DNA of 64,000 nucleotides from Octopus sinensis (Eukaryota): NCBI RefSeq assembly GCF_006345805.1, contig NC_043009.1, positions 44,578,001-44,642,000 on the forward strand, written 5' to 3'. Below the pieces are notes generated by a model. That model saw only the letters and a program-made list of their open reading frames with translations, was not told where the DNA came from and ran no database searches. The translations under genes were made by a program, and so were the position numbers. Positions 23,883 through 60,955 of the stretch are shown here, piece after piece (within the stretch, counting starts at the first letter, position 1; each line of letters opens with the position of its first letter).

Positions 23883-23914
<32 letters not shown>

Positions 23915-23957
23915 ATATATATATGTATGTATGTATATATATGTATATATATATATG

Positions 23958-24016
<59 letters not shown>

Positions 24017-24115
24017 GTATATATGTATGTATGTATATATATATGTATGTATATATGTATGTATATATATATATGTATGTATATATGTATGTATATATAT
24101 ATATATGTATGTATG

Positions 24116-24146
<31 letters not shown>

Positions 24147-24339
24147 ATATGTATGTATATATATATATGTATATATGTATGTATGTATATATATATATGT
24201 ATGTATGTATATATGTATGTATATATATATATGTATGTATGTATATATGTATGTATATATATATATGTATGTATATATGTATGTATATATATATGTATAT
24301 ATGTATGTATGTATGTATATATGTGTATATATATATATG

Positions 24340-24378
<39 letters not shown>

Positions 24379-25128
24379 GTATATATGTATGTATATATGT
24401 ATATATATATATGTATGTATATATGTATGTATATATGTATATATATATGTATGTATATATATATGTATATATATATGTATGTATATATATATGTATATTA
24501 TATATATGTATATATATATTATATGTATGTATATATATATGTATATATATATGTATGTATATATTATGTATATATATATATGTATGTATATATAATGTAT
24601 GTATATATATATGTATATATATATGTATGTATTATATATGTATATATAATGTATGTATATATATATATGTATGTATATATATATATGTATGTATGTATAT
24701 ATGTATTATATATGTATGTATGTATATTATATATATGTATGTATATATATATGTATATATATATATAATATGTATATATATGTATGTATGTATAATATAT
24801 GTATATATATATATATGTATGTATATATATATGTGTATATATATATATGTATGTATATATATATGTATATATATATGTATATATATATTGTATATATATA
24901 TATGTATATATATATATGTATATATATATGTATATAATATGTATGTATATATATATGTATATATATATGTATATATATATGTATGTATATATATATGTGT
25001 GTATGTATATATGTATATATATATTATGTATATATGTATATATATATATATATTATGTATGCATATATATATATATATATACACACACACTCACACAAAT
25101 ATATATATATGTATACATATATGTATGA
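23636..25128. repeat. ~1.5 kb compound (TA)n/(TATG)n microsatellite
   Basis: Continuous TA/TATG units. It explains the 505, 362 and 259 aa Y/I/M/C/V pseudo-ORFs. Confidence 0.98.
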
Positions 25129-28182: not shown

Positions 28183-31100
28183 GCAACTAGATCTCCCTCA
28201 ATCACAGTGTACTGGCTTAAATAAAGAACGATACAATGAACAGAATATCAAAATATCATTATCCAACAGATGGTTTCCCTAATGTTCTGGTGAAGGTGAG
28301 GAAAGTACCCATTTATAGTTGGTCCCAGTCCCCATCCACCCTGTCATAAGTTGAACACCTCTGATGATAGCTTTGTTCAATCAGAACTGACTTTGGGTGG
28401 AGTAAACAACATGTAGAACCCATCAACTGAGGACTTAAAACATTCTAAATGCCATAAATTAATGATAGATCCATTGGAAAGCTAAAACAAACTAGAATGT
28501 TGTTCACAAAAATACATTATATAAACTATAAAAACTCCAAATGATTTAATCTGGTATTTTACCTCTACTACTACTACTACTATTATCACCACCACCACCA
28601 CCTCCCAGGGCCATTTTAGCAGCATTAAAAACTCCTTTGCAAATCAGTGCACTGGGCCCTATAATATGTATTTATTGAAAGCTACAACATATATAGATTA
28701 AAATTCCCCCTAGACCTGTGAGGCTACTAGGCAACTACTCAGTATACTCATGCCTGGAGATAGCACTACTGCCACTACCCCATCTGCTACTACTTTTAGC
28801 AATAAATATTTTTTAGTCTGAAATATTAAAAGGTTTCTTGTTGACTGTCAACAACAATTATTTTTTTTTGCTCTGAAGAAATTTAATTTATTAATTAATT
28901 AAATAAAATCAAAGATAAATCAAAGTAAATTCAGTATCACAAAGGATGTTGTTCATCTTAATTCTTTTGAAACCAACCCACCCAAGGCTATCACCTCTGG
29001 CTTCATAGTACAATGCACTAATCTTTAAAGGTTTCATATGAGAATTAAAAAAGTTTTCTGTTATAATTTTATGTAAGAATTTTAATTTTAGTTTCATTAC
29101 AAATACTAACTTAATAATTGTTTCTGATAAAGATACAGGACCAGAAAGTTATGGGAGAGAGGGCTAGATGATCACCCTCCCTCCCACCCAGTATTTTTAC
29201 TGGTACTTTATTTTATTGACTGTGGGAGGATGAAAGGCATAAATGACATTCGCAACATTTGAACTCAGAACATAAAATGCCACAACTAAATGCTGCAAAT
29301 CATTTTGTCCAATACCCAAACAATTCTGCCAACCTATCACCCTGATGTAAAAGTAAATGATATTTAGTCTGATGATCTACTGACATGATGGCAATGTTTA
29401 ATAGTTCATTAAGCATTTAATTATTTTGAAAATTAAATTAAGCCATGGATAGTTTATGTTGTGAGAAATATGGCCACAAAAGGTTTAATCAAAATATGAC
29501 ATTGTAATTTCTTTCCTGTCATATTGTTGCTTTGTCCCAGGTGAGGTTTGATCAAGCAGACCTATGAACTATCAAAGACATTCCAGTTGTGACCATCTCA
29601 TCTTGTTTATATATCCAAGACTACACTGTCCAATGTATTATTACCTTTCATTCTTCTGGAGGTCTAACTTCATTTATAATATTTTTTAAGATGGTAAGGT
29701 ATGGTCTGAAAGATATATGGCTCCCTAGATTGGTAGTTAGCTCCAAGTTAGCCCAGATTGAACAGACCATGATAAAAGACATTCCAGTCCTTGTTTATTT
29801 ATGTTTGTTGGCTAACATAAAATATCTGGGATTACATTATCCAGTGAGTGAGAGCTTCTATGTGGTGACTCAATCTGCTTGACATAACAGCTAAATATCT
29901 CTCACCTCTCATCCTGCCATGATTTTCTTGTAGATGTTAATACATAGATGTTTAAACTGGGCATTAACCTTATTGATGTCCCCAGTTCAGGAGGACCAAC
30001 ATTTAAAGATGCAACCCTTTCTCTCTAGACTCACCACTAGAAAAATTACTTTCTAAGACATTAAAAGACATTCGATTTTAGTTGCCTTTCTTTTATATTT
30101 TTGTTTAACTGTAGAAGAAAATGGAATGTTCTTAGCTTTTGAAGAACTTTATAGACTGAAATAAAACTGAGTGTGATTGTTGTAACTATGTGAAAATTGA
30201 ACTTTTGGTTTGGGCAAGGTGAGAGAGAGTTCCAGAGAAGTTCAAGATGGAAGAAAGTGGGATTAAGTAAAAATGTTGGCATGAAAGATAGTCAAGAAGA
30301 TGTCAGACACAGTGATATAAATTTATTCTTTGGTGGCATTGCGCTAATTATTATTATGATTATTATCAATATTATTATCATTAATGATTGACAAATGATC
30401 AAAATAAAATATTTTAAAATTTTTTCCAAGAATTATAATGCAATGTCCCAGAATGACCATAGCTGTGATGACTTAACTGACAAAATGAACAAAGATTACA
30501 TAATAATTTTGCTATTTACTTACTGCAAAATTTTTTTTTTTCTTTTTGATCTTTTTATTTTTCATTCCTGACAATTTGGGATATCCTTTGAAAAATAAAA
30601 GATTAAAATCATGGCAAAAATATTTCCAAACTATTTATTTTTAATTTTTTGCAATTCTGAAGAAGAAAATTATTTTGCATGGATTGTGGTTATATTGCAA
30701 CAGGCAAAGACAAAATAAAAAAAAAACTGTCCAAGAAAAAAAATCTGTCCTCATTAGCTTCAAAACATACTGAAAAATTATTTTTAAAATCAACTGCTTT
30801 TTCATTATCAGTTTTTTTCTAAATAAATAAAAATATTAATCTTACAATGCTTTTGTTTTAAATATTTATTTTTAAAATGTTCTCATGTCTTCAACGTTTT
30901 GTTTCTTACTTTCACTAAATAAATGGTAAATCAAGGACTTTTAGCTGCCATAAGTCACAATCAAAACCTTGTTCCATCTATGACACCACCACACTCACGT
31001 TCACTCATATCTCAACACTGATGAAATGTTGGTATTTAGAAAATGTGCTGAAAATTATGAACGAAATTTGAGCTTTATGCATGTGTTTTTTGTTTTATTT

Positions 31101-31209
31101 TTCCAGTTTCACTGGTTTCCTCATATTGTAGGAGAGAGAGAGAGGAGAAATGTTATTAACATACTGATATTTGAACTCTAAAAAAAAAAGAACAATTTTA
31201 ACTCCAGTA
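28183..31209 (+). repeat. Segmental duplication copy A (~3.03 kb), left flank of the satellite
   Basis: Starts 'gcaactagatctccctcaatc' (also at 41294) and ends 'aactccagta' (also at 45736-45745). Collinear with copy B throughout. Confidence 0.95.
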
Positions 31210-34200
31210 TGAACGTGTGAGTGCGCATACGCGTACATGTGCGTGCGCATGCGCGAACGTGTGAGTGCGCATGCGCAAACGTATGCTTACGTATGCGCGA
31301 ACGTTTGCTTGGGCATGCGCGAAAGTGTGCGTGCAAACGCGCGAACGTATTACTACGCATGCGCTAACGCGTGACTGCGCATTCGCGAAAGTGTGACAGT
31401 GCAGACCTTCGCGCATGCGCATTCAGACCATCGCGCATGCGCAGTCAGACATTCGCGCATGCGCAGTCACACGCTCGCGCATGCGCAGTCACACCATCGC
31501 GCATGCGCAGTCACACGTTTGCGCATGCGCAGTCACACATTCGCGCATGCGCAGTCACACTCTCGCGCATGCGCAGTCAGACCTTCGCGCATGCGTAGTC
31601 AGACCTTCGCGCATGCGCAGTCAGACCTTGGCGCATGCGCAGTCAGACCTTCGCGCATGCGCAGTCAGACCTTCGCGCATGCGCAGTCAGACCATCGCGC
31701 ATGCGCAGTCACACTCTCGCGCAAATCTTTCGAAAATTTTCACCCAAAAATTTTCACACTTTCGCGCATGCGCAGTCACACTTTCGCGCATGCGCAGTCA
31801 AACATTCGCGCATGCGCAGTCAGACCTTCACGCATGCGCAGTCAGACCTTCGCGCATGCGCAGTCAGACCTTCGCGCATGCGCAGTCAGACCTTCGCGCA
31901 TGCGCAGTCACACGTTTGCGCATGCGCAGTCACACATTCGCGCATGCGCAGTCACACTCTCGCGCATGCGCAGTCAGACATTCGCGCATGCGCAGTCACA
32001 TTTTTACGCATGCGCAGTCACACATTCGCGCATGCGCAGTCACAGTCGCGCATGCGCAGTCAGATCTTCGCGCATGCGCAGTCACATTTTCACGCATGCG
32101 CAGTCAAACATTCGCGCATGCGCAGTCACACTTTTGCGCATGCGCGAGAGTGTGAGTGCGCATGCGTAAAAATGTGACTGCGCATGCGCAGTCACACTCA
32201 CGCGCATGCGCAGTCAGATCCTCGCGCATGCGCAGTCACATTTTCACGCATGCGCAGTCAAACATTCGCGCATGCGCAGTCACACTTTTGCGCATGCGCA
32301 GTCACAATTTCGCGCATGCGCAGTCAGACCTTGGCGCATGCGCACGCAGAAGGTCTGACTGCGCATGCGCGAGAGTGTGACTGCGCAGGCGCGAATGTGT
32401 GACTGCGCATGCGCAAACGTGTGACTGCGCATGCGCGAGCGTGTGACTGCGCATGCGCGAAGGTCTGACTGCGCATGCGCGATGGTCTGACTGCGCATGC
32501 GCGAAGGTCTGACTGCGCATGCGCGAATGTTTGGCTGCGCATGCGCGAAGGTCTGACTGCGCATGCGCAAAATTGTGACTGCGCATGCGCGAATGTTTGA
32601 CTGCGCATGCGCGAATGTCTGCGTGCGCATGCGCCGAGGTCTGACTGCGCATGCGCGAAATTGTGACTGCGCATGCGCAAAATTGTGACTGCGCATGCGC
32701 GAATGTTTGATTGCGCATGCGCGAGAATGTGACTGCGCATGCGCGAAGGTCTGACTGCGCATGCGCGAAGGTCTGACTGCGCATGCGCGAAGGTCTGACT
32801 GCGCATGCGCGAATGTTTGACTGCGCATGCGCGAAAGTGTGACTGCGCATGCGCGAAAGTGTGAAAATTTTTGGGTGAAAATTTTCGAAAAATTTCCGGG
32901 GAAAATTTTTGGGGAAAATTTTCAATGAAAATTTTCGAAAAATTTTCGGGCAAATTTTCGAAAAATTTTTTGAAAAAATTTTCGTCAAAATTTTCCAAAT
33001 ATTTTTCTGCAATATTTTCGGTGAAAATTTTTCAAAAAATTTTTGGAGAAAACTTTCGGTGAAACTTTTCGAAAGATTTTCCGGACAAAATTTTGGGGAT
33101 AATTTTCAATGAAAATTTTCGAAAACTTTTTGTGAAAAATATTCGTTCAAAATTTTCCAAATATTTTCCTGCAATATTTTCGGTCAAAATTTTACAAAAA
33201 TTTTTGCGGAAAATTTTTCAAAAAATTTTCGGTGAGCGTGTGCGTGCGCATGCGCGAAAATGTGACTGCGCACCCGCGAATGTGTCACTGCGCATGCGCG
33301 AAAGTGTGATTGCGCATGCGCGAGAGTGTGACTGCGCATGCGCGAGAGTGTGACTGCGCATGCGCGAATTTGTGACTGCGCATGCGCAAACGTGTGATTG
33401 AGCGTGCGCGATGTTGTGACTGCGCATGCGCGAATGTTTGACTGCGCATGCGTAAAAATGTGACTGCGCATGCGCGAAAGTGTGACTGCGCATGCGCGAA
33501 AATGTGACTGCGCACGCGCGAAAATGTGACAGCGCATGCGCGAGGGTGTGACTGCGCATGCGCGAATGTGTGACGATGCATGCGCGAATGTGTCACTGCG
33601 CATGCGCGAGATTGTGACTGCGCATGCGCGAATGTGTGACTACGCATGCGCGAAGATCTGACTGCGCATGCGCGAAAGTTTGATTGCGCCTGCGCATGCG
33701 CGAAAGTGTGAAAATTGTCGAAAAATTTTCGTGGAAATTTTTGGGGAAAATTTTCAATGAAAATTTTCGAAAAATTTCGGGCAAAATTTTCCAAAAATTT
33801 TAGTGAAAAGTTTTCGGTCAAAATTTTCCAAATATTTTTCTGCAATATTTTCGGTGAAAATTTACCAAAAATTTTTGAGGAAAATTTTTTGGGATAATTT
33901 TCAATGAAAATTTTCGAAAAATTTTCGCTCAAAATTTTCCAAATATTTTTCTGCAATATTTTGGTGAAAATTTTCAACAAATTTTTGGAGAAAACTTTCG
34001 GTGAAAATTTTCGAAAAATTTTCCGGACAAAGTTTTGGGGATAATTTTCAATGAAAATTTTCGAAAAATTTTTGTGAAAAATTTTCGAAAAATTTTTGTG
34101 AAAAATATTCGTTCAAAATTTTCCAAATATTTTCCTGCAATATTTTCGGTGAAAATTTTACAAAAATTTTGGGGAAAATTTTTCAAAAAAATTTTCGGTG

Positions 34201-37200
34201 AGCGTGTGCATGCGTATGCGCGAAAATGTGACTACGCACGCGCGACTGTGTCACTGCGCATGCGCGAAATTGTGACTGCGCATGCGGCAAGGTCTGACTG
34301 CGCATGCGCGAGAGGGTGACTGCGCATGCGCGAGAGGGTGACGGCGCATGCGCGAATTTGTGACTGCGCATGCGCAAACGTGTGATTGCGCATGCGCGAA
34401 TTTGTAACTGCGCATGCGCGAAGGTCTGACTGCGCATGCGCGAATGTTTGGCTGCGCATGCGCGAAGGTCTGACTGCGCATGCGCGAATGTTTGACTGCG
34501 CATGCGCGAAAGTGTGACTGCGCATGCGCGAAAGTGTGAAAATTTTTGGGTGAAAATTTTCGAAAAATTTCCGGGGAAAATTTTTGGGGAAAATTTTCAA
34601 TGAAAATTTTCGAAAAATTTTCGGGCAAAATTTTCCAAAAATTTTAGTGAAAAGTTTTCGGTCAAAATTTTCCAAATATTTTTCTGCAATATTTTCGGTG
34701 AAAATTCAAAAAATTTTTGGAGAAAACTTCGGTGAAAATTTTCGAAAAATTTTCCAGACAAAATTTTGGGGATAATTTTCAATGAAAATTTTCGAAAAAT
34801 TTTTGTGATGTTGTAAAAAATATTCGTTCAAAATTTTCCAATATTTTCCTGCAATATTTTCGGTGAAAATTTTACAAAAATTTAGGGAAAATTTTTCAAA
34901 AAAATTTTCGGTGAGCGTCGTGTTGCGTGCGCATGCGCGAAAATGTGACTGCGCAGCGCAGAATGTGTCACTGCGCATGCGCAAAAGTGTGACTGCGCAT
35001 GCGCGAATGTCTGCGTGGGCATGCGCCAAGGTCTGACTGCGCATGCGCGAAATTGTGACTGCGCATGCGCAAAAGTGTGACTGCGCATGCGCGAATGTTT
35101 GACTGCGCATGCGTGAAAATGTGACTGCGCATGCGCGAAGATCTGACTGCGCATGCGCGAGTGTGACTGCGCATGCGCGAATGTGTGACTGCGCATGCGC
35201 GATGGTGTGACTGCGCATGCGCGAGAGTGTGACTGCGCATGCGCGAAGGTCTGACTGCGCATGCGCGAAGGTCTGACTGCGCATGCGCGAATGTTTGACT
35301 GCGCATGCGCGAATGTCTGCGTGCGCATGCGCCGAGGTCTGACTGCGCATGCGCGAAATTGTGACTGCGCATGCGCAAAATTGTGACAGCGCATGCGCGA
35401 ATGTTTGACTGCGCATGCGTAAAAATGTGACTGCGCATGCGCGAAGGTCTGACTGCGCATGCGCGAGAGTGTGACTGCGCATGCGCGAATGTGTGACTGC
35501 GCATGCGCAAACGTGTGACTGCGCATGCGCGATGGTGTGACTGCGCATGCGCGAGAGTGTGACTGCGCATGCGCGATGGTCTGACTGCGCATGCGCGAAG
35601 GTCTGACTGCGCATGCGCCAAGGTCTGACTGCGCATGCGCGAAGGTCTGACTACGCATGCGCGAAGGTCTGACTGCGCATGCGCGAATGTGACTGCGCAT
35701 GCGCGAACGTGTGACTGCGCACGCGCGAAAGTGTGAAAATTTTGGGGGAAAATTTTCAATGGAAATTTTCGAAAAATTTCGGGCAAAATTTTCCAAAAAT
35801 TTTAGTGAAAAGTTTTCGGTCAAAATTTTACAAATATTTTTCTGCAATATTTTCGGTGAAAATTTACCGAAAATTTTTGAGGAAAATTTTTGGGGATAAT
35901 TTTGAAAATTTTCGGTGAGCGTGTGCGTGCGCATGCGCGAAAATGTGACTGCGCACGCGCGAATGTGTCACAGCGCATGCGCGAAAGTGTGACTGCGCAT
36001 GCGCGAAATCTGCGCGTGCGCATGTGCCAAGGTCTGACTGCGCATGCGCGAAATGTGGATGCGCATGCGCAAAAGTGTGACTGCGCATGCGCGAATGTTT
36101 CACTGCGCATGCGTTGTGAAATGTGACTGCGCATGCGCGAAGATCTGACTGCCACATGCGCGAGGAGTGTGACTGCGCATGCGCGAAGAATGTGTGGCTG
36201 CGCATGCGCAAACGTGTGACTGCGCATGCGCGATGGTGTGACTTCTGCGCATGCGCGAAGGTCTGACTGCGCATGCGCGAATGTCTGGCTGCGCATGCGC
36301 GAATGTTTGACTGCGCATGCGCGAATGTCTGCGTGCGCATGCGCCAAGGTCTGACTGCGCATGCGCGAAATTGTGACTGCGCATGCGCGAAATTGTGACT
36401 GCGCATGCGCGAATGTTTGATTGCGCATGCGTAAATATGTGACTGCGCATGCGCGAAGGTCTGACTGCGCATGCGCGAGAGTGTGACTGCGCATGCGCGA
36501 ATGTGTGACTGCGCATGCGCAAACGTGTGACTGCGCATGCGCGATGGTGTGACTGCGCATGCGCGAGCGTGTGACTGCGCATGCGCGAAGGTCTGACTGC
36601 GCATGCGCGATGGTCTGACTGCGCATGCGCGAAGGTCTGACTGCGCATGCGCGAATGTTTGGCTGCGCATGCGCGAAGGTCTGACTGCGCATGCGCAAAA
36701 TTGTGACTGCGCATGCGCGAATGTTTGACTGCGCATGCGCGAATGTCTGCGTGCGCATGCGCCGAGGTTGACTGCGCATGCGCGAATTGTGACTGCGCAT
36801 GCGCAAAATTGTGACTGCGCATGCGCGAATGTTTGATTGCGCATGCGCGAGAGTGTGACTGCGCATGCGCGAAGGTCTGACTGCGCATGCGCGAAGGTCT
36901 GACTGCGCATGCGCGAATGTGACTGCGCATGCGCGAACGTGTGACTGCGCACGCGCTAAAGTGTGAAAATTTTTGGGGAAAATTTTCAATGGAAATTTTC
37001 CAAAAAATTTCGGGCAAAATTTTCCAAAAATTTTAGTGAAAAGTTTTCGGTCAAAATTTTACAAATATTTTTCTGCAATATTTTCGGTGAAAATTTACCG
37101 AAAATTTTTGAGGAAAATTTTTGGGGATAATTTTGAAAATTTTCGGTGAGCGTGTGCGTGCGCATGCGCGGAAAATGTGACTGCGCACGCGCGAATGTGT

Positions 37201-40200
37201 CACAGCGCATGCGCGAAAGTGTGACTGCGCATGCGCGAAATTGTGATTGCGCATGCGCGAATGTTTGATTGCGCATGCGTAAAAATGTGACTGCGCATGC
37301 GCGAAGGTCTGACTGCGCATGCGCGAGAGTGTGACTGCGCATTCGCGAATGTGTGACTGCGCATGCGCAAACGTGTGACTGCGCATGCGCGAGCGTGTGA
37401 CTGCGCATGCGCGAAGGTCTGACCGCGCATGCGCGATGGTCTGACTGCGCATGCGCGAAGGTCTGACTGCGCAGGCGCGAATGTTGGTGCGCATGCGCGA
37501 AGGTCTGACTGCGCATGCGCAAAATTGTGACTGCGCATGCGCGAATGATTCACTGCGCATGCGCGAATGTCGTGCGTGCGCATGCGCCAAGGTCTGACTG
37601 CGCATGCGCGAAATTGTGACTGCGCATGCGCAAAATTGTGACTGCGCATGCGCGAATGTTTGATTGCGCATGCGCGAGAATGTGACTGCGCATGCGCGAA
37701 GGTCTGGCTGCGCATGCGCGAATGTTTGACTGCGCATGTGCAAATATCTGCGTGCGCATGCGCGAAGGTCTGACTGCGCATGCGCGAAGGTCTGACTGCG
37801 CATGCGCGAATGTTTGACTGCGCATGCGCGAAAGTGTGTGACTGCGCATGCGCGAAAGTGTGAAAATTTTGGGTGAAAATTTTCGAAAAATTTCCGGGGA
37901 ATTTTTGGGGAAAATTTTCAATGAAAATTTTCGAAAAATTTTCGGGCAAAATTTTCCAAAAATTTTAGTGAAAATTTTAGGTCAAAATTTTCCAAATATT
38001 TTTCTGCAATATTTTCGGTGAAAATTTTCAAAAAATTTTTGGAGAAAACTTTCGGTGAAAATTTTCGAAAAATTTTCCAGACAAAATTTTGGGGATAATT
38101 TTCAATGAAAATTTTCGAAAAATTTTTGTGAAAAATATTCGTTCAAAATTTTCCCAAAATATTTTCCTGCAATATTTTCGGTGAAAATTTAACAAAATTT
38201 TAGGGAAAATTTTTCAAAAAAATTTTCGGTGAGCGTGTGCGTGCGCATTGCGCGAAAATGTGACTGCGCACGCGCGGAATGTGTCACTGCGCATGCGCAA
38301 AAGTGGGACTGCGCATGCGCGAATGTCTGCGTGGGCATGCGCCAAGTGTCTGACTGGCTGCGCGCGAAAATGTGACTGCGCATGCGCAAAAGTGTGACTG
38401 CGCATGCGCAAAAGTGTGACTGCGCATGCGCGAATATTTGACTGCGCATGCGTGAAAATGTGACTGCGCTTGCGCGAAGATCTGACTGCGCATGCGCGAG
38501 TGTGACTGCGCATGCGCGAATGTGTGACTGCGCATGCGCAAACGTGGGACTGCGCATGCGCGATGATGTGACTGCGCATGCGCGAGAGTGTGACTGCGCA
38601 TGCGCGAAGGTCTGACTGCGCATGCGCGAAGGTCTGACTGCGCATGCGCGAATGTTTGACTGCGCATGCGCGAATATCTGCGTGCGCATGCCCGAGGTCT
38701 GACTGTGCATGCGCGAAATTGTGACTGCGCATGCGCAAAATTGTGACAGCGCATGCGCGAATGTTTGACTGCGCATGCGTAAAAATGTGACTGCGCATGC
38801 GCAAACGTGTGACTGCGCATGCGCGATGGTGTGACTGCGCATGCGCGAAGGTCTGACTGCGCATGCGCGAATGTCTGGCTGCGCATGCGCGAATGTTTGA
38901 CTGCGCATGCGCGAATGTCTGCGTGCGCATGCGCCAAGGTCTGACTGCGCATGCGCGAAATTGTGACTGCGCATGCGCAAAATTGTGACTGCGCATGCGC
39001 GAATGTTTGATTGCGCATGCGCGAAAATGTGACTGCGCATGCGCGAAGGTCTGACTGCGCATGCGCGAAGGTCTGACTGCGCATGCGCGAAGGTCTGACT
39101 GCGCGTGCGCGAAGGTCTGACTGCGCATGCGCGAATGTTTGACTGCGCATGCGCGAAAGTGTGACTGCGCATGCGCGAAAGTGTGAAAATTTTTGGGTGA
39201 AAATTTTCGAAAAATTTCCGGGGAAAATTTTTGGGGAAAATTTTCAATGAAAATTTTCGAAAAATTTTCGGGCAAAATTTTCCAAAAATTTTAGTGAAAA
39301 GTTTTCGGTCAAAATTTTCCAAATATTTTTCTGCAATATTTTCGGTGAAAATTTTCAAAAAATTTTTGGAGAAAACTTTCGGTGAAAATTTTCGAAAAAT
39401 TTTCCAGACAAAATTTTGGGGATAATTTTCAATGAAAATTTTCGAAAAATTTTTGTGAAAAATATTCGTTCAAAATTTTCCAAATATTTTCCTGCAATAT
39501 TTTCGGTGAAAATTTTACAAAAATTTTAGGGAAAATTTTTCAAAAAAATTTTCGGTGAGCGTGTGCGTGCGCATGCGCGAAAATGTGAATGCGCACGCGC
39601 GAATGTGTCACTGCGCATGCGCAAAAGTGTGACTGCGCATGCGCGAATGTCTGCGTGGGCATGCGCCAAGGTCTGACTGCGCATGCGCGAAATTGTGACT
39701 GCGCATGCGCAAAAGTGTGACTGCGCATGCGCGAATATTTGACTGCGCATGCGTGAAAATGTGACTGCGCATGCGCGAAGATCTGACTGCGCATGCGCGA
39801 GTGTGACTGCGCATGCGCGAATGTGTGACTGCGCATGCGCAAACGTGTGACTGCGCATGCGCGATGATGTGACTGCGCATGCGCGAGAGTGTGACTGCGC
39901 ATGCGCGAAGGTCTGACTGCGCATGCGCGAAATTGTGACAGCGCATGCGCAAAATTGTGACTGCGCATGCGCGAATGTTTGACTGCGCATGCGCGAATGT
40001 TTGACTGCGCATGCGCGAATGTCTGCGTGCGCATGCGCCAAGGTCTGACTGCGCATGCGCGAGAGTGTGACTGCGCATGCGCGAATGTGTGACTGCGCAT
40101 GCGCAAACGTGTGACTGCGCATGCGTGATGGTGTGACTGCGCATGCGCGAAGGTCTGACTGCGCATGCGCGAATGTTTGGCTGCGCATGCGCGAAGGTCT

Positions 40201-41295
40201 GACTGCGCATGCGCGAATGTGACTGCGCACGCGCGAAAGTGTGAAAATTTTTGGGGAAAATTTTTAATGGAAACTTTCGAAAAATTTCGGGCAAAATTTT
40301 CCAAAAATTTTAGTGAAAAGTTTTCGGTCAAAATTTTACAAATATTTTTCTGCAATATTTTCGGTGAAAATTTACCGAAAATTTTTGAGGAAAATTTTTG
40401 GGGATAATTTTGAAAATTTTCGGTGAGCGTGTGCGTGCGCATGCGCGAAAATGTGACTGCGCACGCGCGAATGTGTCACAGCGCATGCGCGAAAGTGTGA
40501 CTGCGCATGCGCGAATGTCTGCGTGCGCATGCGCCAAGGTCTGACTGCGCATGCGCGAAATTGTGACTGCGCACGCGCAGAAGTGTGACTGCGCATGCGC
40601 GAATGTTTGGCTGCGCATGCGCGAATGTTTGGCTGCGCATGCGCGAAGGTCTGACTGCGCATGCGCAAAATTGTTACTGCGCATGCGCGAATGTTTGACT
40701 GCGCAAGCGCGAATGTCTGCGTGCGCATGCGCCGAGGTCTGACTGCGCATGCGCGAAATTGTGACTGCGCATGCGCAAAAGTGTGACTGCGCATGCGCGA
40801 ATGTTTGATTGCGCATGCGCGAATGTGTGACTACGCATGCGCGAAAGAGTGATTGCGCATGCGCGAACATGTGACTGCGCATGCGCGAACCTGTGACTGC
40901 GCATGTGCGAATGTTTGACTGCGCATGCGCGAACATGTGACTGCGCATGCGCGAAAGTGTGACTGCGAAAGTGTGAAAATTTTCGAAAAATTTTTGTGAA
41001 AAATTTTCGATGAAAATTTTCGAAATATTTTTGGGGTAAATTTTTGGTGAATATTTTCGGTGAACGTGTGCGTGCGCATGCGCGAACGTGTTACTGCGCA
41101 CGCGCGAACGTGTGACTGCGCATGCGCGAACGTGTGACTGCGCATGCGCGAAAATGCGACTGCACATGCACGAATATGTGACTGCGCATGAGCGAAGGTC
41201 TGACTGCTCTTGCCTAAAATTGTGACTGCGCATGCACGAAAGTGTGACTGCGCATGCGTGATAGTGTGACTGCGCATGCTCGAATGTGTGACTGC
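31210..41295. repeat. Higher-order satellite array: ~21-22 bp GTGACTGCGCATGCGCGAA-type monomers alternating with ~90-490 bp AAAATTTT-rich blocks
   Basis: Direct reading of the sequence. Nine main AT blocks at ~32862, 33710, 34538, 35733, 36965, 37862, 39185, 40243 and 40975, plus a stub at ~31723. All AHAQS/RMRS/ACAV ORFs derive from it. Confidence 0.97.
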
Positions 41296-44200
41296 AACTA
41301 GATCTCCCTCAATCAGTGTACTGGCTTAAATAAAGAACGATACAATGAACAGAATATCAAAATATCATTATCCAACAGATGGTTTCCCTAATGTTCTGGT
41401 GAAGGTGAGGAAAGTACCCATTTATAGTTGGTCCCAGTCCCCATCCACCCTGTCATAAGTTGAACACTTCTGATGATAGCTTTGTTCAATCAGAACTGAC
41501 TTTGGGTGGAGTAAACAACATGTAGGACCCATCAACTTTGGACTAAAACATTCTAAATGCCATAAATTAATGATAGATCCATGGGAAACCTAAAACAAAC
41601 TAGAATGTTGTTCATAAAAATACATATAAAATATAAAAACTCCAAATGATTTAATCTGGCATTTTACCACCACCACCACCTCCTCGCCCTCCTCCTCCTC
41701 AATCTCTCAGGGCCATTTTAGCAGCATTAAAAACTCCTAGGCAAATCAGTGCACTGGGCCTTATATGTATTTATTGACAGAAAGCCACAACATATATAGA
41801 TTAAAATTCCCCCTAGACCCGTGAGGCCACTAACTACCCAGTATACTCATGCCTGGAGATAGCACTACCACCACTACCCTATCTGCTATTACTTTTAGCA
41901 ATAAATATTTTTTAGTCTGAAATATTAAAAGGTTTCTCATTGACTGTCAACAACAATTATTTTTTTTGTTCTGAAGAAATTTAATTTATTAATTAATTAA
42001 ATAATATCAAAGATAAGTCAAAGTAAATTCAGTATAACAAAGGATGTTGTTCATCTTAATTCTTTTGAAACCAACCCACCTAAGGCTATCACCTCTGGCT
42101 TCATAGTACAATACACTAATCTTCAAAGGATTCATATAAGAATTAAAAAAGTTTTCTGTTATAATTTTATGTAAGAATTTTAATTTTAGTTTCATTACAA
42201 ATACCAACTTAATAATTGTTTCTGATAAAGACACAGGACCTGAAATTTATGGGAGAGAGGGCTAGATGATCATCCTCCCTCCCACCCAGTATTTTGACTG
42301 GTACTTTATTTTATTTACCGTGGGAGGACAATAGCCATAAATGACATTCACAACATTTGAACTCGAACATAAAATGCCATAACTAAATACTGCAAAGTAT
42401 TCTGTCCAATGCCCAAACAATTCTGCCAACCAATCACCCTGATATAAAAGTAAATGATATTTAGTCTGATGATCTACTGACATGATGGCAATGTTTAATA
42501 GTTCATTAAGCATTTAATTATTTTGAAAATTAAATTAAGCCATGGATGGTATATGTTGTGAGAAGTATGGCCACAAAAGGTTTAAACAAAATATGACATT
42601 GTAATTTCTTTTCTGTCATATTGTTGCTTTGTCCCAGGTGAGGTTTGATCAAGCAGACCTATGAACTATCAAAGACATTCCAGTTGTGACCATCTCATCT
42701 TGTTTATATATCCAAGACTACACTGTCCAATGAAGGGTCCTTCATTTATTATATTTTTTAAGATGGTAAGGTGTGGTCTGAAAGATATATGGCTCCCTAG
42801 ATTGGTAGTTAGCTCCAAGTTAGCCCAGATTGAACAGACCATGATAAAAGACATTCCAGTCCTTGTTTATTTATGTTTGTTGGCTAACATAAAATATCTG
42901 GGATTACATTATCCAGTGAGTGAGAGCATCTATGTGGTGACTCAATCTGCTTGACATAACAGCTAAATATCTCTCACCTCTCATCCTGCCATGATTTTCT
43001 TGTAGATGTTAATACATAGATGTTTAAACTGGGGATTAACCTTATTGATGTCCCCAGTTCAGGAGGACTGACATTTAAAGATGCAACCCTTTCTCTCTAG
43101 ACTCACCAATAGAAAAATTACTTTCTAAGACATTAAAAGACATTTGATTTTAGTTGCCTTTCTTTTATATCTTTGTTTAACTGTAGAAAAAAAAGGAATG
43201 TTCTTAGCTTTTGAAGAACTTTATAGACTGAAATAAAACTGAGTGTGTTTGTTGCAACTATGTAAAAATTAAATTTTTGGTTTGGGCAAGGTGAGAGAGA
43301 GTTCCAGAGAAGTTCAAGATAGAAGAGTGTGGAATTAAGTAAAAATGTTGGCATGAAAGATAGTCAAGAAGATGTCAGACACAGTGATATAAATTTATTC
43401 TTTGGTGGCATTGCGCTAGACCTTGCTCTAATTGCTGAGTCGCTATCAGAACTGGAGGAGAAGTTTCAGGTGTGGAAACAAGGATTAGAATCGAAGGGCC
43501 TCAGAGTCAATCTAGCTAAAACCAAAGTCGTAATCAGTAGGAAGGTAGACAAATCACAAACGCCTTCAGGTAGATGGCCCTGCTCGATCTGTAGAAAAGG
43601 TGTAGGTAGAAACTCTATAAGATGCACCAAGTGTAAGCTATGGACACATAAGAGGTGCAGCAATGTCAAAGGAAGGCTAACTAGGAAGATGGTTTTGTAT
43701 GTGGCAGATGCTCAGGAACAATAAACACTGAAAATGCTCTGAGACCAACTTCCGTCACTTTCCAGGGAGAAAAACTAGAAATAGTTGATAGTTTCCGTTA
43801 CCTAGGTGACCAAGTCAGCAGCGGGGGCGGGTGTGCTGAAAGTGTAACTGCTAGAGTAAGAATAGCTTGGGCAAAGTTCAGAGAGCTCTTACCTCTGCTG
43901 GTGACAAAAGGCCTCTCGCACAGAGTGAAAGGCAGACTGTATGATGCGTGTGTACGAACAGCCATGCTACATGGCAGTGAAACATGGGCCATGACTGCTG
44001 AGGATATGCGTAAGCTCGCAAGAAATGAAGCCAGTATGCTCCGATGGATGTGTAATGTCAGTACTCATACTCGGCAGAGTGTAAGTACTTTGAGAGAAAA
44101 GCTGGACCTAAGAAGCATCAGTTGTGGTGTGCAAGAGAGATGTTTGCGCTGGTATGGTCATGTGGCAAGAATGGATGAAGATAGTTGTGTGAAAAAGTGC

Positions 44201-45745
44201 CACACCCTAGCGGTTGAGGGAACCTGCGGAAGAGGCAGACCCAGGAAAACCTGGGATGAGGTGGTGAAGCACGACCTTCGAACTTTAGGTCTCACTGAGG
44301 AAATGACTAGAGACCGAGACCTCTGGAAGTGTGCTGTGCGCGAGAAGACCTGGCAGAACAAGTGAGTCCATAACCCGTGGCCTTCTACATGGGATGGAGC
44401 CAGCCTACGTATGCATACCTTCCCTTCTTGGGACACAAAACTCTACTTGTGAAGACCTGTTGAGGCAAGTGAGGATCAGAATCGAAATCGATCAATGGAA
44501 ATTGCAGATGTGTTACCAGTGCCGGTGGCATGTAAGAGAACCTTCCGTTTCGCGACCGTTACCAGCGCCGTCCCGACTGGCCTCGTGCCGGTGGCACGTA
44601 AAAAGCACCATCCATTTGTGTCCGTTGCCAGCCTCGCCTGGCCCCCGTGCCGGTGGCACATAAAAAGCACCATCCGTTCGTGGCCGTTTGCCAGCTCTGT
44701 CTGGCACCTGTGCAGGTGGCACGTAAAAAGCACCCACTACACTCACGGAGTGGTTGGCGTTAGGAAGGGCATCCAGCCGTAGAAACACTGCTAGATTTGA
44801 CTGGGCCTGATGAAGCCTTCTGGCTTCACAGACCCCAGTTGAACCGTCCAACCCATGCTAGCATGGAAAACGGACGCTAAACGATGATGATGATGATGAT
44901 TATTATCATTAGCGATTGACAAATGATCAAAATAAAATATTTTAAAATTTTTTCCAAGAATTATAAGGCAATGTCCCAGAATGACCATAGCTGTGATGAC
45001 TTAACTGACAAAATGAACAAAGATTACATAATAATTTTGCTATTTACTTACTGCAAAATGTTTTTTTTTCTTTTTGATCTTTTTATTTTTCATTCCTGAC
45101 AATTTGGGATATTCTTTGAAAAATAAAAGATTAAAATCATGGCAAAAATATTTCCAAACTATTTATTTTTAATTTTTTGCAATTCTGAAGAAGAAAATTA
45201 TTTTGCATGGATTGTGGTTATATTGCAACAGGCAAAGACAAAATAAAAAAAAAAACTGTCCAAGAAAAAAAATCTGTCCTCATTAGCTTCAAAACATACT
45301 GAAAAATTATTTTAAAAATCAACTGCTTTTTCATTATCAGTTTTTTTCTAAATAAATTAAAATATTAATCTTACAATGCTTTTGTTTTAAATATTTATTT
45401 TTAAAATATTCTCATGTCTTCAACGTTTTGTTTCTTACTTTCACTAAATAAATGGTAAATCAAGGACTTTTAGCTGCCATAAGTCACAATCAAAACCTTG
45501 TTCCATCTATGACACCACCACACTCACGTTCACTCATATCTCAACACTGATGAAATGTTGGTATTTAGAAAATGTGCTGAAAATTATGAACGAAATTTGA
45601 GCTTTATGCATGTGTTTTTTGTTTTATTTTTCCAGTTTCACTGGTTTCCTCATATTGTAGGAGAGAGAGAGAGGAGAAATGTTATTAACATACTGATATT
45701 TGAACTCTAAAAAAAACAAAAAAACGAACAAGTCTAACTCCAGTA
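41294..45745 (+). repeat. Segmental duplication copy B (~2.97 kb plus a 1.48 kb RTE insertion), right flank of the satellite
   Basis: Collinear with 28183-31209 apart from the LINE at 43419-44900. Confidence 0.95.
43419..44900 (+). mobile_element. 5'-truncated RTE-clade LINE: RT C-terminal half with PHD-like Cys/His insert, 3' UTR and (GAT)n tail
   Basis: Starts within the YADD motif (D-LALIAESLSELEEKFQVWKQGLESKGLRVNLAKTKV). Includes CSICRKGVGRNSIRCTKCKLWTHKRC, then after a frameshift near 43695 FRYLGDQ...MLHGSETW...GRGRPRKTWDEVVKHDL, with a stop at 44365. Absent from copy A at 30346/30347. Confidence 0.95.
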
Positions 45746-46583: not shown

Positions 46584-46959
46584 TTAACTCTTTCAGTTCT
46601 GAATTCACAAAATCACTTTTTTAAACATAAAATACTTTTTAAAGTTGCTTTTATATGAAACTCATGAACCCGGAACCATGTCCTACACCTATAAATGATG
46701 ATGATGGTTTAGTAGAAAAAAAAAACTTAGTACCAAGTTAACCAAGTAATACACAGTGAGATGGAATCAAGAGCCGTCTTGTTGCAACAGGAAACCTCCT
46801 AAGCACACATCCATGCCTGTGTCCACTCAAAACACCCAACAGTTTATCTCAAAGGACTAAACATGTTTACATGTCCCTAACAAATTACATCTTATGCTGT
46901 ATAGGAAAAGGTAAAGTTTTATCAGAATTATGTTTGACTTCAGAGAAACCTATATATAT

Positions 46960-47403
46960 ATCATCATCGTTTAGCATCCACTTTCCATGCTAGCATGGGT
47001 TGGACGGTTCAAATGGGGTCTGGGAAGCCAGAAGGCTGCACCAGGTCCCAGTCTGATCTGGCAATGTTTCTACGGCTGGATGCTCTTCCTAACGCCAACC
47101 ACTCCGTGAGTGTAGTGGGTGCTTTTTACGTGCCACCGGCACAGGTGCCAGACAAGGCTGGCAAACGGCCACAATCGGATGGTGCTTTTTACGTGCCACT
47201 GGCACGGGGGCCAGGCGAGGCTGGCAATGGCCACAATTGGATGGTGCTTTTTGTGTGCCACCGGCACGAGGCCAGATGGGGCGGCGCTGGCAACGGCCAC
47301 ATTCGGATGGTTCTCTTATATGCCACCGGCACTGGTATCACAGCTGCAATTTCCATTGATGTTGATCGATTTCGATTTTGATTTTCACTTGCCTCAACAG
47401 GTC
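46960..47403 (-). mobile_element. RTE LINE 3' UTR fragment inserted in (TA)n
   Basis: Reverse complement of the 44455-44900 3' UTR, including the 'ccggtggcacgtaaaaagcacc' sub-repeats and tail. Confidence 0.9.
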
Positions 47404-59985: not shown

Positions 59986-60271
59986 AAGTATGACTGTGTC
60001 AGTGTTTGTCTCCATCACCAATTGACAACTGGTGTTGGTGTGTTTACATCCCCATAACTTAGTGGTTTGGCAAAAAGAGACTGATACAATAAGTGCCAAA
60101 CTTTAACGTAAAATAGTACTGGGGTCGATTCGTTCGACTGAAATCCTTCGAAGTGGTGCCCCAGCATGGCTGCAGTCAGATGACTGAAACCAGTGAAAGA
60201 CAAAAGATAACCATAACAAAATAAAAAAATAAATAAATAAAAAAAAAACATTAAAAAAAATTGTAGTTTAC

Positions 60272-60543
60272 CTTAATTTCTTTGAAGAGCAACACTCCCC
60301 ATGCTGAGGCAATCAACATTGGCCCCGATGTGATAATGGGGAAGGAGACTGGTTCCAACAGAACGGCATTGGCCACGAAAAAGCAGGCCGTGGCAACACC
60401 CCACATTATTCCTGATATGATCCCTGGGAGAATAGCTTTAGGGTAAACTACTGGTTTGTTACGCATGAAAATAACATAGATACAGAAATACACTGATGCA
60501 GTCAAGTAAATCCCACAGTAATGAGCGAAAACATAGTCCAAAC
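60272..60543 (-). CDS. TMEM144: TMEM144 internal coding exon (transmembrane protein 144)
   Basis: 'ttttttttctag|gt ttg gac tat' acceptor and 'AAG|gtaaac' donor; 272 bp. LDYVFAHYCGIYLTASVYFCIY...PGIISGIMWGVAT...VSFPIITSGPMLIASAWGVLLFKEIK closely parallels the TMEM144 family sequence (LDYVFAHFSGIF...VSFPIITAGPG..AAMWGIFMFKEIK). Confidence 0.95.
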
Positions 60544-60570
60544 CTAGAAAAAAAAGAGAAATAAATAAAT

Positions 60571-60955
60571 CATCATCATCATCGTTTAACGTCCGCTTTC
60601 CATGCTAGCATGGGTTGGACGGTTCAACTGGGGTCTGGGAAGCCAGAAGGCTGCACCAAGCTCCAGTCTGATCTGGCAGTGTTTCTACAGCTGGATGCCC
60701 TTCCTAACGCCAACCACTCCGTGAGTGTAGTGGGTGCTTTTTACGTGCCACCGGCACAGGTGCCAGACGAGGCTGGCAAACGGCCACGATCGGATGGTGC
60801 TTTTTACATGCCACCAGCCACAATCGGATGGTGCTTTTTACGTGCCACCGGCCATGAATCGGATGGTGCTTTTTACGTGCCACCAGCATGGAGGCCAGTC
60901 GGGGCGGCGCTGGCTACGGCCACATTCGGATGGTTCTCTTACGTGCCTCCAGTTA
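60571..60955 (-). mobile_element. RTE LINE 3' UTR fragment ending ~26 nt upstream of a TMEM144 splice acceptor
   Basis: Reverse complement of the RTE 3' UTR. The (GAT)n tail starts at ~60571 and the acceptor AG is at 60544-60545. Confidence 0.9.

What the first reader, a model, noticed from the sequence alone, without database searches (positions are those of the whole stretch)
31210..41295. 10 kb higher-order satellite built from roughly 300-350 NRF1-type palindromes
Seen: nearly every monomer contains TGCGCATGCGC(G/A), spaced about two helical turns apart. Monomer variants (aggtct-, atgttt-, aattgt-, acgtgt-, gagtgt-) recur in ordered runs. GC blocks start and end with stereotyped monomers, giving a ~0.8-1.4 kb higher-order period with more diverged array ends. 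Established: YGCGCAYGCGCR is the site of the NRF1/Erect-wing/P3A2 family, binding is blocked by CpG methylation, and alternating purine-pyrimidine CG-rich runs favour Z-DNA. Inference: this CpG-dense island in an AT-rich genome could act as a methylation-switchable transcription-factor sink, boundary or enhancer between two convergent genes. The monomer count is an estimate.
Basis: partly seen in the sequence, partly recalled or inferred. Interest (0 to 1): 0.8.

Follow-up and report, generated by a model that had tools for sequence, protein, structure and literature searches.

The report
Octopus satellite of NRF1-type palindromes
A 10 kb stretch of an octopus genome is a real tandem array of about 340 copies of a 22-base unit, each carrying a perfect binding-site consensus for the NRF1 family of transcription factors; it has kept its CpGs while the DNA around it has lost them, but whether any protein binds it or it does anything remains untested.

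Summary
Window 31210-41295 holds about 336-344 units of 22 bp. There are 266 exact GCGCATGCGC and 256 sites matching YGCGCAYGCGCR, with none outside the array and 0 expected by chance. The units form a statistically real higher-order pattern of 0.7-1.3 kb, and the array ends are more diverged.

- The spacers between GC blocks are nine blocks of a second repeat built on AAAATTTT.
- The first ~1 kb is inverted.
- The array sits exactly at the joint of a 3 kb direct duplication (28183-31209 and 41294-45745).

The host is an octopus. The array has CpG o/e 1.76 and shows no excess of CpG transitions. Its flanks have o/e 0.09-0.38 and do show CpG decay. This points to a germ-line-unmethylated, fast-turning-over satellite.

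Variation is confined to five spacer positions, which fits a protein reading the other 17 bp. An NRF1/Ewg dimer is the best candidate, but array edges decay freely and nothing here tests binding.

"Two convergent genes" is not supported: I found one TMEM144 exon 19 kb away. No prior description was found. I file it as a new member of a known kind (a satellite carrying a transcription-factor motif), of moderate interest.

The parts
28183..31209 (+). U: left copy of a 3 kb direct duplication. It ends exactly where the array begins.
   Evidence: blastn against 41294-43418 (93.4%) and 44884-45745 (97.2%). Overall identity 96%; CpG o/e 0.09.
31210..31396 (+). Diverged left edge of the array: about 8 old monomers of GAACGTGTGA type in + orientation.
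   Evidence: TRF gives 22 bp x8.5 at 73% matches. Core mismatch 0.113/site.
31397..32344 (-). Inverted segment: about 43 monomers in reverse orientation. It includes a short inverted AT-block remnant at about 31715-31760.
   Evidence: TRF consensus CAGTCACACCTTCGCGCATGCG. Lower-case code strings. Best inverted pair is 31720-32044 against 32574-32898, 92% complementary.
32245..32445 (.). Orientation switch point (centre about 32345-32352). The single strand folds into a hairpin of about 95 bp.
   Evidence: DNA fold -108.9 kcal/mol, z -16.2. Arms are 80-92% complementary and lose register after about 300 bp.
32349..32864 (+). GC block 1: 22-bp monomers in + orientation.
   Evidence: TRF 23.5 copies at 87%. 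Code string CDISAQAPALBHUELM.AAABK.
32867..33221 (+). AT block, long form (AAAATTTT repeat).
33238..33695 (+). GC block 2.
   Evidence: TRF 20.8 copies
33714..34187 (+). AT block, longest form (474 bp, with internal extra units).
34204..34539 (+). GC block 3.
   Evidence: TRF 15.3 copies
34542..34916 (+). AT block, long form.
   Evidence: 98.3-99.2% identical to the blocks at 37866 and 39189
34928..35735 (+). GC block 4.
35739..35904 (+). AT block, short form (166 bp).
35928..36960 (+). GC block 5.
36969..37135 (+). AT block, short form.
37145..37860 (+). GC block 6.
37866..38224 (+). AT block, long form.
38230..39185 (+). GC block 7.
39189..39544 (+). AT block, long form.
39560..40245 (+). 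GC block 8.
40247..40412 (+). AT block, short form.
40425..40964 (+). GC block 9.
40965..41061 (+). AT block, truncated and diverged.
41065..41295 (+). Diverged right edge of the array: 10 monomers, several with decayed cores.
   Evidence: core mismatch 0.11/site
41294..45745 (+). U': right copy of the 3 kb duplication. It starts at the last bases of the array and is interrupted by a retroelement insertion at 43419-44883.
60254..60604 (-). Context only: an exon of a TMEM144-family transporter gene, the nearest recognisable gene.
   Evidence: Pfam PF07857, E 1.1e-35, profile positions 205-310 of 332

Best explanation
This is a lineage-specific composite satellite in an octopus genome. The 22-bp unit has 17 nearly invariant bases (TGACTGCGCATGCGCGA, with the palindrome GCGCATGCGC at its centre) and a 5-base variable patch. 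Runs of 15-47 units alternate with blocks of a second repeat made of AAAATTTT motifs spaced about 12 bp apart. Together they make higher-order units of 0.7-1.3 kb.

Shown: the array lies exactly at the joint of a 3 kb tandem duplication. Its edges hold old, decayed units. Its interior consists of recently duplicated kilobase units, and one piece was duplicated in inverted orientation.

Inferred: it grew from sequence at the duplication joint. It is kept in flux by unequal exchange and replication slippage, helped by the fact that every core can pair with every other core on a single strand.

Shown: its ~1000 CpGs have not decayed, although the flanking DNA is among the most CpG-depleted possible.

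Inferred: it is unmethylated in the germ line, that is, it behaves as a very large CpG island. The 17 conserved bases are what is being kept, most probably because a protein reads them. The best candidate is a dimer of the NRF1/Ewg/P3A2 family, whose consensus YGCGCAYGCGCR is matched by about 256 units. About 60% of units also carry an overlapping E2F-like GCGCGAA. If so, the locus is a dense docking array for a methylation-sensitive factor, with sites 2.1 helical turns apart. I regard any effect on neighbouring genes as a by-product until it is shown otherwise.
For: Structure: searches give the period, counts, HOR and chance expectation.

Joint of a duplication: 28183-31209 against 41294-43418 plus 44884-45745; exact boundaries, no array beyond U'.

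Turnover: AT blocks of paralogous units are 98.2-99.4% identical, while the adjacent GC parts are 86-97% identical with many unit gains and losses. U and U' are 96% identical, so the interior is younger than the duplication. Edges are decayed. For the inverted duplication. Direct-repeat stretches also fold better than shuffles, z -4.9.

No CpG decay: the core CpG positions C8, G9, C14 and G15 are 97.8-99.7% conserved, no less than non-CpG positions. Of 49 polarised private changes, only 5 are CpG transitions, against about 4.5 expected if all sites and changes were equally likely. Transitions to transversions are 19:30.

Contrast: U and U' have CpG o/e 0.09 and 0.14. Only 5 of their 13 CpG positions are shared, at 4% overall divergence.

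Constraint pattern: only positions 1, 17, 19, 20 and 21 are strongly variable. Each carries 3-4 alleles at appreciable frequency, while ten core positions are 95-99.7% fixed. Private changes run at 1.6/site in the core against 3.1/site in the otherwise conserved spacer positions.

Factor: the NRF1 DNA-binding domain is 60-70% identical between human and arthropods or an annelid.

Precedent: NRF1 binds CpG-island tandem-repeat TERRA promoters (PMC6468625).

A second array with the same palindrome at the same 22-bp spacing but an unrelated spacer exists in another public assembly (P0243).
Against: No binding, chromatin or methylation data were available.

Array edges lose their cores as fast as other positions (0.11/site). 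So there is no sign of selection on individual sites, and interior conservation may be nothing more than recent amplification of one good copy.

The interior is young (1-2% divergence between AT blocks), which limits the power of the CpG-decay argument.

The depletion of private changes in the core is marginal (16 observed against about 22 expected, my estimate p~0.03-0.05). The low transition/transversion ratio suggests that some 'private changes' are assembly errors or conversions.

Conservation around the palindrome is asymmetric (TGACT on one side, GAA on the other), which a symmetric homodimer does not explain.

In O. bimaculoides, satellites are reported as relatively more methylated than other repeats (PMC9476566).

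An octopus NRF1 orthologue was not identified by name among the 120 listed hits.
Confidence: 0.45

Rival explanations
1. Inert, young satellite. A GC-rich 22-mer that happens to contain a palindrome was amplified recently by unequal exchange. It is packaged as heterochromatin (possibly methylated), binds no specific factor and has no function. The intact CpGs and cores reflect youth and homogenisation only.
For: The interior is young: AT blocks are 98-99.4% identical. Edges decay in the core as elsewhere. Self-pairing cores favour slippage. Satellites are the relatively more methylated repeat class in O. bimaculoides (PMC9476566). A palindromic GC core could be favoured by the amplification mechanism itself.
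Against: Variation is confined to five clustered positions, each with 3-4 alleles, while 17 positions stay nearly fixed. Under neutrality, recurrent hits should not avoid 17 of 22 positions. With the roughly ten-fold CpG excess seen in U/U', 1-2% divergence should already have removed roughly 10-20% of core CpGs (my estimate). About 1-2% are changed. The same core at the same 22-bp spacing with a different spacer is seen in another assembly.
Confidence: 0.3
2. The array is a regulatory element in its own right: a methylation-switchable NRF1 sink, an insulator or boundary, or an enhancer or promoter acting on the neighbouring genes.
For: About 256 consensus sites in 10 kb. CpG-island character inside CpG-depleted DNA. 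NRF1 is methylation-sensitive (established knowledge). Precedents exist: NRF1-bound tandem-repeat TERRA promoters and CTCF-bound DXZ4 (from memory).
Against: No gene was found within 19 kb, and only one was found in the window. [quoted passage not shown] The fast structural turnover of the array is unlike a conserved regulatory element. A single 10 kb locus is small as a sink unless many such arrays exist, and that could not be tested.
Confidence: 0.12
3. The array is the internal part of, or cargo of, a mobile element whose 3 kb terminal direct repeats are U and U' (LTR-like). Alternatively it arrived by integration of a circular U+array molecule.
For: The layout is direct repeat, array, direct repeat, with precise ends. 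Satellite arrays are known to form circles (from memory).
Against: U starts GCAAC and ends CCAGTA, so there are no TG...CA termini. The 5 bp outside the two ends differ (AAGTA against AGACC), so there is no target-site duplication. No ORF of U that I scanned hits Pfam. There is no further copy of U in the window apart from an embedded SINE-like piece.
Confidence: 0.05
4. The inverted kilobase makes the locus a hairpin-RNA or small-RNA source if it is transcribed, or a fragile palindrome.
For: Near-perfect hairpin of about 95 bp at the switch point, z -16. The arms continue for about 300 bp at 80-92%.
Against: There is no evidence of transcription. Only about 10% of the array is involved. Rfam has no match.
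Confidence: 0.05
5. Assembly artefact: a mis-joined or collapsed long-read assembly, or a false palindrome from a chimeric read.
For: Satellites and inverted junctions are classic trouble spots. The low transition/transversion ratio of private changes (19:30) hints at some base errors.
Against: The variant order is rich, non-random and internally consistent. The inverted arms are diverged and out of register rather than identical. There are clean unique junctions on both sides.
Confidence: 0.04

Closest known systems
NRF1 / alpha-Pal / Erect wing / P3A2 binding site (YGCGCAYGCGCR)
   Same: About 256 units match the full 12-mer consensus and 266 carry the exact 10-bp palindrome. The site contains CpGs whose methylation blocks NRF1 (established knowledge).
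   Different: Known sites are single or paired, and lie in promoters. Here there are about 340 in tandem at fixed 22-bp spacing, far from any recognised gene. Binding is untested.
Human subtelomeric TERRA promoter repeats (CpG-island tandem repeats bound by NRF1; Diman et al., as reviewed in PMC6468625)
   Same: A CpG-rich tandem repeat that acts as an NRF1 platform.
   Different: Those are subtelomeric, under 1 kb, made of longer units (61/29/37 bp, from memory), and demonstrably promoters. This array is interstitial, 10 kb long, built from a 22-bp unit with HOR, and has no known transcript.
Satellites carrying a protein-binding box (CENP-B box in alpha satellite; CTCF sites in the DXZ4 macrosatellite; GAGA factor on AAGAG satellite; from memory)
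   Same: A conserved short motif inside an otherwise variable repeat unit, with higher-order repeats, decayed array edges and homogenised interiors. DXZ4 binding depends on hypomethylation.
   Different: Different motif, factor, unit length and host. No centromeric or X-linked context is known. Genomic copy number is unknown.
Vertebrate-type CpG island
   Same: GC 0.50 and CpG o/e 1.76 over 10 kb, set in DNA with o/e 0.09-0.38.
   Different: It is made entirely of tandem repeats, is not at a recognised promoter, and sits in an invertebrate with a sparse gene-body methylome.
GC-rich mollusc satellites (e.g. SSUsat of Spisula subtruncata, PMC5537241, seen only as a search listing)
   Same: A GC-rich satellite in a mollusc genome, with methylation studied.
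   Different: A different species and sequence. I did not read that paper. No NRF1 motif is known to me there.

Membership tests
NRF1/Ewg/P3A2 binding site | Sequence match to YGCGCAYGCGCR | tested here: met
   504 strand matches (about 256 sites), 0 expected
NRF1/Ewg/P3A2 binding site | Bound by the factor in vitro or in vivo | not testable with these tools
   Needs EMSA, DAP-seq or CUT&RUN
NRF1/Ewg/P3A2 binding site | Host encodes an NRF1-family protein with a conserved DNA-binding domain | tested here: inconclusive
   397 PF10491 proteins at E<=1e-20. Arthropods and the annelid Helobdella are 60-70% identical to the human domain. No entry among the 120 listed is named as octopus.
NRF1/Ewg/P3A2 binding site | CpGs of the site unmethylated where bound | tested here: inconclusive
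   Indirect only: no CpG decay in the array against strong decay in U/U'. The young age of the interior limits the power of this test.
Satellite DNA with higher-order repeats | Head-to-tail monomers of constant length | tested here: met
   22-bp period; 276 spacings of exactly 22 bp
Satellite DNA with higher-order repeats | Monomer variants recur in a fixed order | tested here: met
   49 repeated 4-grams against 0.1 in shuffles; code strings
Satellite DNA with higher-order repeats | Homogenised interior, diverged edges | tested here: met
Satellite DNA with higher-order repeats | Many copies or loci in the genome; listed in a repeat library | not testable with these tools
   No octopus assembly or repeat library was available. 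Scans of the metagenome, prokaryote and viral collections gave 0 hits.
CpG island | Length >200 bp, GC >=0.5, CpG o/e >0.6 | tested here: met
   10 kb, GC 0.499, o/e 1.76 with the AT blocks included
CpG island | Unmethylated in vivo, at a promoter | not testable with these tools
   No methylome or transcript data
LTR-type mobile element (U and U' as terminal repeats) | TG...CA termini and a target-site duplication | tested here: not met
   U starts GCAAC and ends CCAGTA. The outer flanks AAGTA and AGACC differ.
LTR-type mobile element (U and U' as terminal repeats) | Internal coding region (gag/pol) | tested here: not met
   The interior is only the array. Its ORFs have a 22-aa period and no homologues.
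Z-DNA-prone tract | Alternating purine-pyrimidine run rich in CG | tested here: met
   TGCGCATGCGCG is a 12-bp perfect alternation and occurs in 182 units. Actual Z formation is not testable.

The most novel reading that the evidence does not exclude
Arrays of GCGCATGCGC at a fixed 22-bp spacing are a recurrent, constrained architecture. The same core and spacing with an unrelated spacer occur in another assembly (P0243). In octopus such an array would be held free of methylation inside a methylated, CpG-depleted domain. It would work as a high-capacity docking platform for the NRF1 orthologue, acting as a reservoir, a nucleosome-excluding boundary or a promoter of array transcripts. The A4T4 blocks would set the chromatin spacing.
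Probability: 0.15. Interest if true: 0.75.

Novelty: new member of a known kind. Interest (0 to 1): 0.45.

Why it matters
If the octopus NRF1 orthologue really occupies about 340 phased sites, this would be a natural, extreme example of a transcription-factor array. It would be a test bed for how a methylation-sensitive factor, CpG density and tandem repetition interact in an animal with a sparse gene-body methylome. The locus also shows, base by base, a satellite born at the joint of a tandem duplication. The sharp contrast in CpG decay between the array and its flanks is a ready-made assay for germ-line methylation boundaries in cephalopods. If the array is inert, it is simply one more lineage-specific satellite.

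Tried and rejected
- Translation of an array ORF against the 5.8-billion-protein index: no hit.
- Exact look-ups of an array ORF and of the LINE ORF: not on record.
- The pattern of three palindromes at 22-bp spacing in the metagenome, GTDB-genome and viral collections: 0 hits each. These hold almost no animal DNA, so the result says nothing about other cephalopods.
- Library-wide phmmer with an array ORF: only weak hits to translations of other tandem repeats, one of which (P0243) shares core and spacing.
- Rfam over the whole window: nothing.
- Eight literature searches for the motif in tandem repeats, NRF1 in cephalopods, and octopus satellites: no prior description.
- Global autocorrelation of the array: uninformative beyond 22-220 bp because of indels. 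Self-megablast was too degenerate to define units. The monomer-type code and the AT-block alignments worked instead.
- Coding reading rejected. The period of 22 is not a multiple of 3. All three minus-strand frames are open only because the unit lacks stop triplets on that strand. There are no homologues.
- LTR-element reading rejected (no termini, no target-site duplication).
- Perfect-palindrome artefact rejected.
- Search for flanking genes: 20 ORFs scanned, and only the TMEM144 exon and the retroelement RT/PHD piece hit Pfam. A packed six-frame scan was prepared but not submitted.
Full report
WHAT IS THERE

The window is AT-rich eukaryotic DNA (GC 0.29-0.42 in most kilobases) with many dinucleotide microsatellites. 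Between 31210 and 41295 the GC content jumps to about 0.5. Tandem Repeats Finder reports 22-bp arrays over the whole interval.

The palindrome GCGCATGCGC occurs 266 times exactly and 322 times with at most one mismatch. Every one of these lies inside the interval. Of the distances between neighbouring cores, 276 are exactly 22 bp. The 12-mer consensus YGCGCAYGCGCR gives 504 strand matches (about 256 sites) against 0.00 in 100 dinucleotide-preserving shuffles. I recognise 336 cores, and 7.57 kb of GC blocks divided by 22 gives 344 units.

THE UNIT

I aligned 324 units in register. This set misses almost none of the array, so it carries little ascertainment bias. The consensus is GTGACTGCGCATGCGCGAAAGT.

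- Positions 7-16 (the palindrome) are 95-99.7% conserved.
- Positions 2-6 (TGACT) are 86-98% conserved.
- Position 18 is 97% conserved.
- Strong variation is limited to positions 1, 17, 19, 20 and 21. Each of these carries three or four alleles at appreciable frequency; for example position 20 has A108/C31/G92/T93.

HIGHER ORDER

I coded units by spacer type. This gives recurrent ordered strings such as ACDINSAQAPALBH, BH(F/U)ELM, GRWD and JHFEJ, in blocks that open with G-(V/Y)-(K/J) and close with ABK or AAXT. Repeated 4-grams of types number 49, against a mean of 0.1 and a maximum of 4 in 500 shuffles.

The GC blocks are separated by nine AT-rich blocks, 2.5 kb in all, whose starts are 718-1323 bp apart. 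These blocks are not junk spacers. They are a second tandem repeat built on AAAATTTT: 131 copies in the array, against 0 of the reverse arrangement TTTTAAAA. There are 35 perfect GAAAATTTTC palindromes, and the motif centres alternate 11 and 13 bp apart.

The blocks come in a long form (355-375 bp, one of 474) and a short form (166-167 bp). Copies are nearly identical: 98.2-99.4%. The GC parts next to paralogous AT blocks are only 86-97% alike, with many unit gains and losses. So the 22-mers are reshuffled faster than the kilobase units are duplicated.

Both ends of the array are old. TRF gives 73% matches at 31211-31396. Core mismatch is 0.11 per site at both edges, against about 0.02 inside. 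Both edges share the GAACGTGTGA variant.

First, units in 31397-32344 are in reverse orientation. The best inverted pair, 31720-32044 against 32574-32898 at 92%, includes the start of an AT block, so a piece of the array was copied in inverted orientation. The switch point folds as a hairpin of about 95 bp (-108.9 kcal/mol, z -16). However, the arms are only 80-92% complementary and lose register after about 300 bp. This argues against a chimeric-read artefact.

Second, the array is bracketed by a direct duplication. Segment 28183-31209 matches 41294-43418 (93.4%) and 44884-45745 (97.2%). The right copy carries a 1.46 kb retroelement insertion with a reverse-transcriptase/PHD piece. The left copy ends at the first base of the array, and the right copy begins at its last two bases. 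There is no array before the left copy or after the right one.

The layout is therefore X-U-array-U'-Y: the satellite sits at the joint of a 3 kb tandem duplication. An LTR-element reading fails, because there are no TG...CA termini, no target-site duplication and no coding interior.

HOST AND NEIGHBOURS

The retroelement ORF has its best named relatives in Octopus vulgaris (90% over the aligned part) and O. bimaculoides (68-69%). The window is therefore from an octopus.

The only recognisable gene piece is a TMEM144-family exon at 60254-60604 on the minus strand (E 1e-35). Nineteen other ORFs, including ten from the left flank and U, gave nothing except the retroelement. 'Between two convergent genes' is thus unsupported.

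CpG BEHAVIOUR

The array has CpG o/e 1.76. The left and right flanks have 0.25 and 0.38, and U and U' have 0.09 and 0.14. From the CpG count published for O. bimaculoides, I estimate a genome-wide o/e near 0.5, so these flanks are unusually depleted.

U and U' differ at 4% of sites, but only 5 of their 13 CpG positions are shared. Five of the differences are CpG-to-TpG/CpA changes. So CpGs next to the array mutate roughly ten times faster than other sites, which is the signature of germ-line methylation.

Inside the array the four CpG bases within the palindrome are 97.8-99.7% conserved, no worse than non-CpG bases. I polarised 49 private changes, taking singleton units that lie one step from a type with at least three copies. 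Only 5 of them are CpG transitions, about what uniform mutation would give. Transitions do not exceed transversions (19:30).

With 1-2% divergence between the youngest paralogues, a ten-fold CpG excess should already have removed 10-20% of core CpGs (my estimate). That has not happened. The simplest reading is that the array is not methylated in the germ line. The caveats are the youth of the interior, homogenisation, and possible base errors.

The published methylome says the following. Fewer than 10% of octopus CpGs are methylated. These are mostly in gene bodies, with the same pattern in hatchling and adult brain. Satellites are relatively more methylated than other repeats (PMC9476566). 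This neither confirms nor excludes my reading, and it speaks against a tissue 'switch'.

IS THE PALINDROME UNDER CONSTRAINT?

For constraint:
- Recurrent multi-allelic variation is confined to five clustered positions out of 22. My rough estimate is about a 2% chance of such clustering.
- Private changes hit the core at 1.6 per site, against 3.1 per site in the otherwise conserved spacer positions. This is marginal.
- A library-wide search turned up P0243, from an unnamed 165 kb ENA contig. Its 22-residue period AHA-LCTY-R-ACA-MYLS-RMR-YVLI is the three-frame translation of GCGCATGCGC every 22 bp. It has the same register as the window's AHA-QSDL-R-ACA-VRPS-RMR-SQTF, but an unrelated spacer.

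Against constraint:
- At the array edges, where homogenisation does not reach, cores decay as fast as anything else.
- The conserved flanks are asymmetric (TGACT against GAA). A symmetric NRF1 dimer does not explain this.

The GAA side creates GCGCGAA(A). The sequence TTTCGCGC, the E2F consensus as I remember it, occurs 51 times. The relaxed TTSGCGC occurs 208 times. All of these are in the array. This is a lead, not a test.

WHO COULD READ IT

The NRF1 DNA-binding domain (PF10491) is 60-70% identical between human and arthropods or the annelid Helobdella. From established knowledge, human NRF1, sea-urchin P3A2 and fly Ewg recognise the same palindrome, and CpG methylation blocks NRF1. No hit among the 120 listed is named as octopus, so the host factor is inferred, not shown. 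NRF1 binding to CpG-island tandem repeats has a precedent in human TERRA promoters (PMC6468625).

MECHANISM I COMMIT TO

A satellite arose at a duplication joint and is expanded and scrambled by unequal exchange and slippage. The single strands of even direct-repeat stretches fold better than shuffles, z -4.9. The array behaves as a giant germ-line-unmethylated CpG island and is probably decorated by an NRF1-family dimer every 22 bp (2.1 helical turns).

- Structure and history are shown.
- Hypomethylation is inferred from mutation spectra.
- Binding is inferred from the motif and the conservation pattern.
- Any regulatory role is speculation.

My confidence by step is about 0.9 for the structural and evolutionary account, about 0.6 for hypomethylation and about 0.4 for NRF1 binding. 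For the whole statement it is about 0.45. The main rival is an inert young satellite (0.3).

COMPARISON AND NOVELTY

In kind, this is a satellite with a protein-binding box and higher-order repeats. Alpha satellite with the CENP-B box and DXZ4 with CTCF are comparable, and the closest case by motif is the set of NRF1-bound TERRA promoter repeats. What is particular here is the near-perfect NRF1 consensus in about 75% of 340 units, the partnership with an A4T4 repeat, the CpG-decay contrast with the flanks, and the visible birth site.

I found no description of it in eight full-text searches. I could not consult a repeat library or any cephalopod assembly. I therefore file it as a new member of a known kind, of moderate interest (0.45). 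It would be more interesting (0.75) if binding, hypomethylation and cross-species conservation of core and spacing were shown.

Noticed in passing
window 2027-5205: A second tandem duplication: 2027-3628 against 3601-5205, 98.7% identical, period about 1574 bp. There are (TA)n microsatellites at both outer ends and at the joint (2027-2070, 3584-3645, 5162-5205). This is another case in this window of a simple repeat sitting at a duplication joint.
   Followed up: partly
P0243 (protein from an unnamed 165 kb ENA contig); P0255 (Logan contig of 968 bp): P0243 has a 22-residue period that is the three-frame translation of GCGCATGCGC every 22 bp, in the same register as the window's array but with an unrelated spacer. 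P0255 has a short stretch about 75% identical to the array's translation. The organisms are unknown.
   Followed up: partly
window 31210-41295 (AT blocks listed in parts): The AT blocks come in lengths of 166-167 bp and 355-375 bp, close to one and two nucleosome repeat lengths. They contain 131 AAAATTTT and no TTTTAAAA, a polarity known (from memory) to matter for intrinsic DNA bending.
   Followed up: no
window 31210-41295: The conserved GAA after the palindrome creates GCGCGAA(A). TTTCGCGC, the E2F consensus as I recall it, occurs 51 times. The relaxed TTSGCGC occurs 208 times. All are inside the array. The conserved TGACT on the other side remains unexplained.
   Followed up: partly
window 28183-31209 against 41294-45745: Identity between the two copies of the 3 kb duplication rises from about 93% at their left ends to 99.4% in alignment columns 2500-3000, near their right ends. 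This suggests gene conversion or a composite history.
   Followed up: no
window 23634-25126: A 1.5 kb imperfect AT/ATGT-type microsatellite. In 24001-25000 the GC content is 0.12 and the GC skew is +1.0, meaning no C at all on the plus strand.
   Followed up: no
window 43323-44903, 46942-47403, 54735-55065, 58090-58912, 60555-60950: A retroelement 3' part (RT/PHD, best named hits in octopus) is followed by a GC-rich SINE-like tail with 62-63 bp internal tandem repeats (GTGCCGGTGGCACGTAAAAAGCACC...). It recurs five times in both orientations. A 98-bp x3 repeat lies at 58282-58573.
   Followed up: partly
window 60254-60604 (minus strand): An exon of a TMEM144-family sugar-transporter-like gene (Pfam PF07857, E 1e-35, profile positions 205-310 of 332). 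Its 3' end must lie towards the array.
   Followed up: partly
window 48843-49277: A 216-bp unit repeated twice at 98% identity.
   Followed up: no
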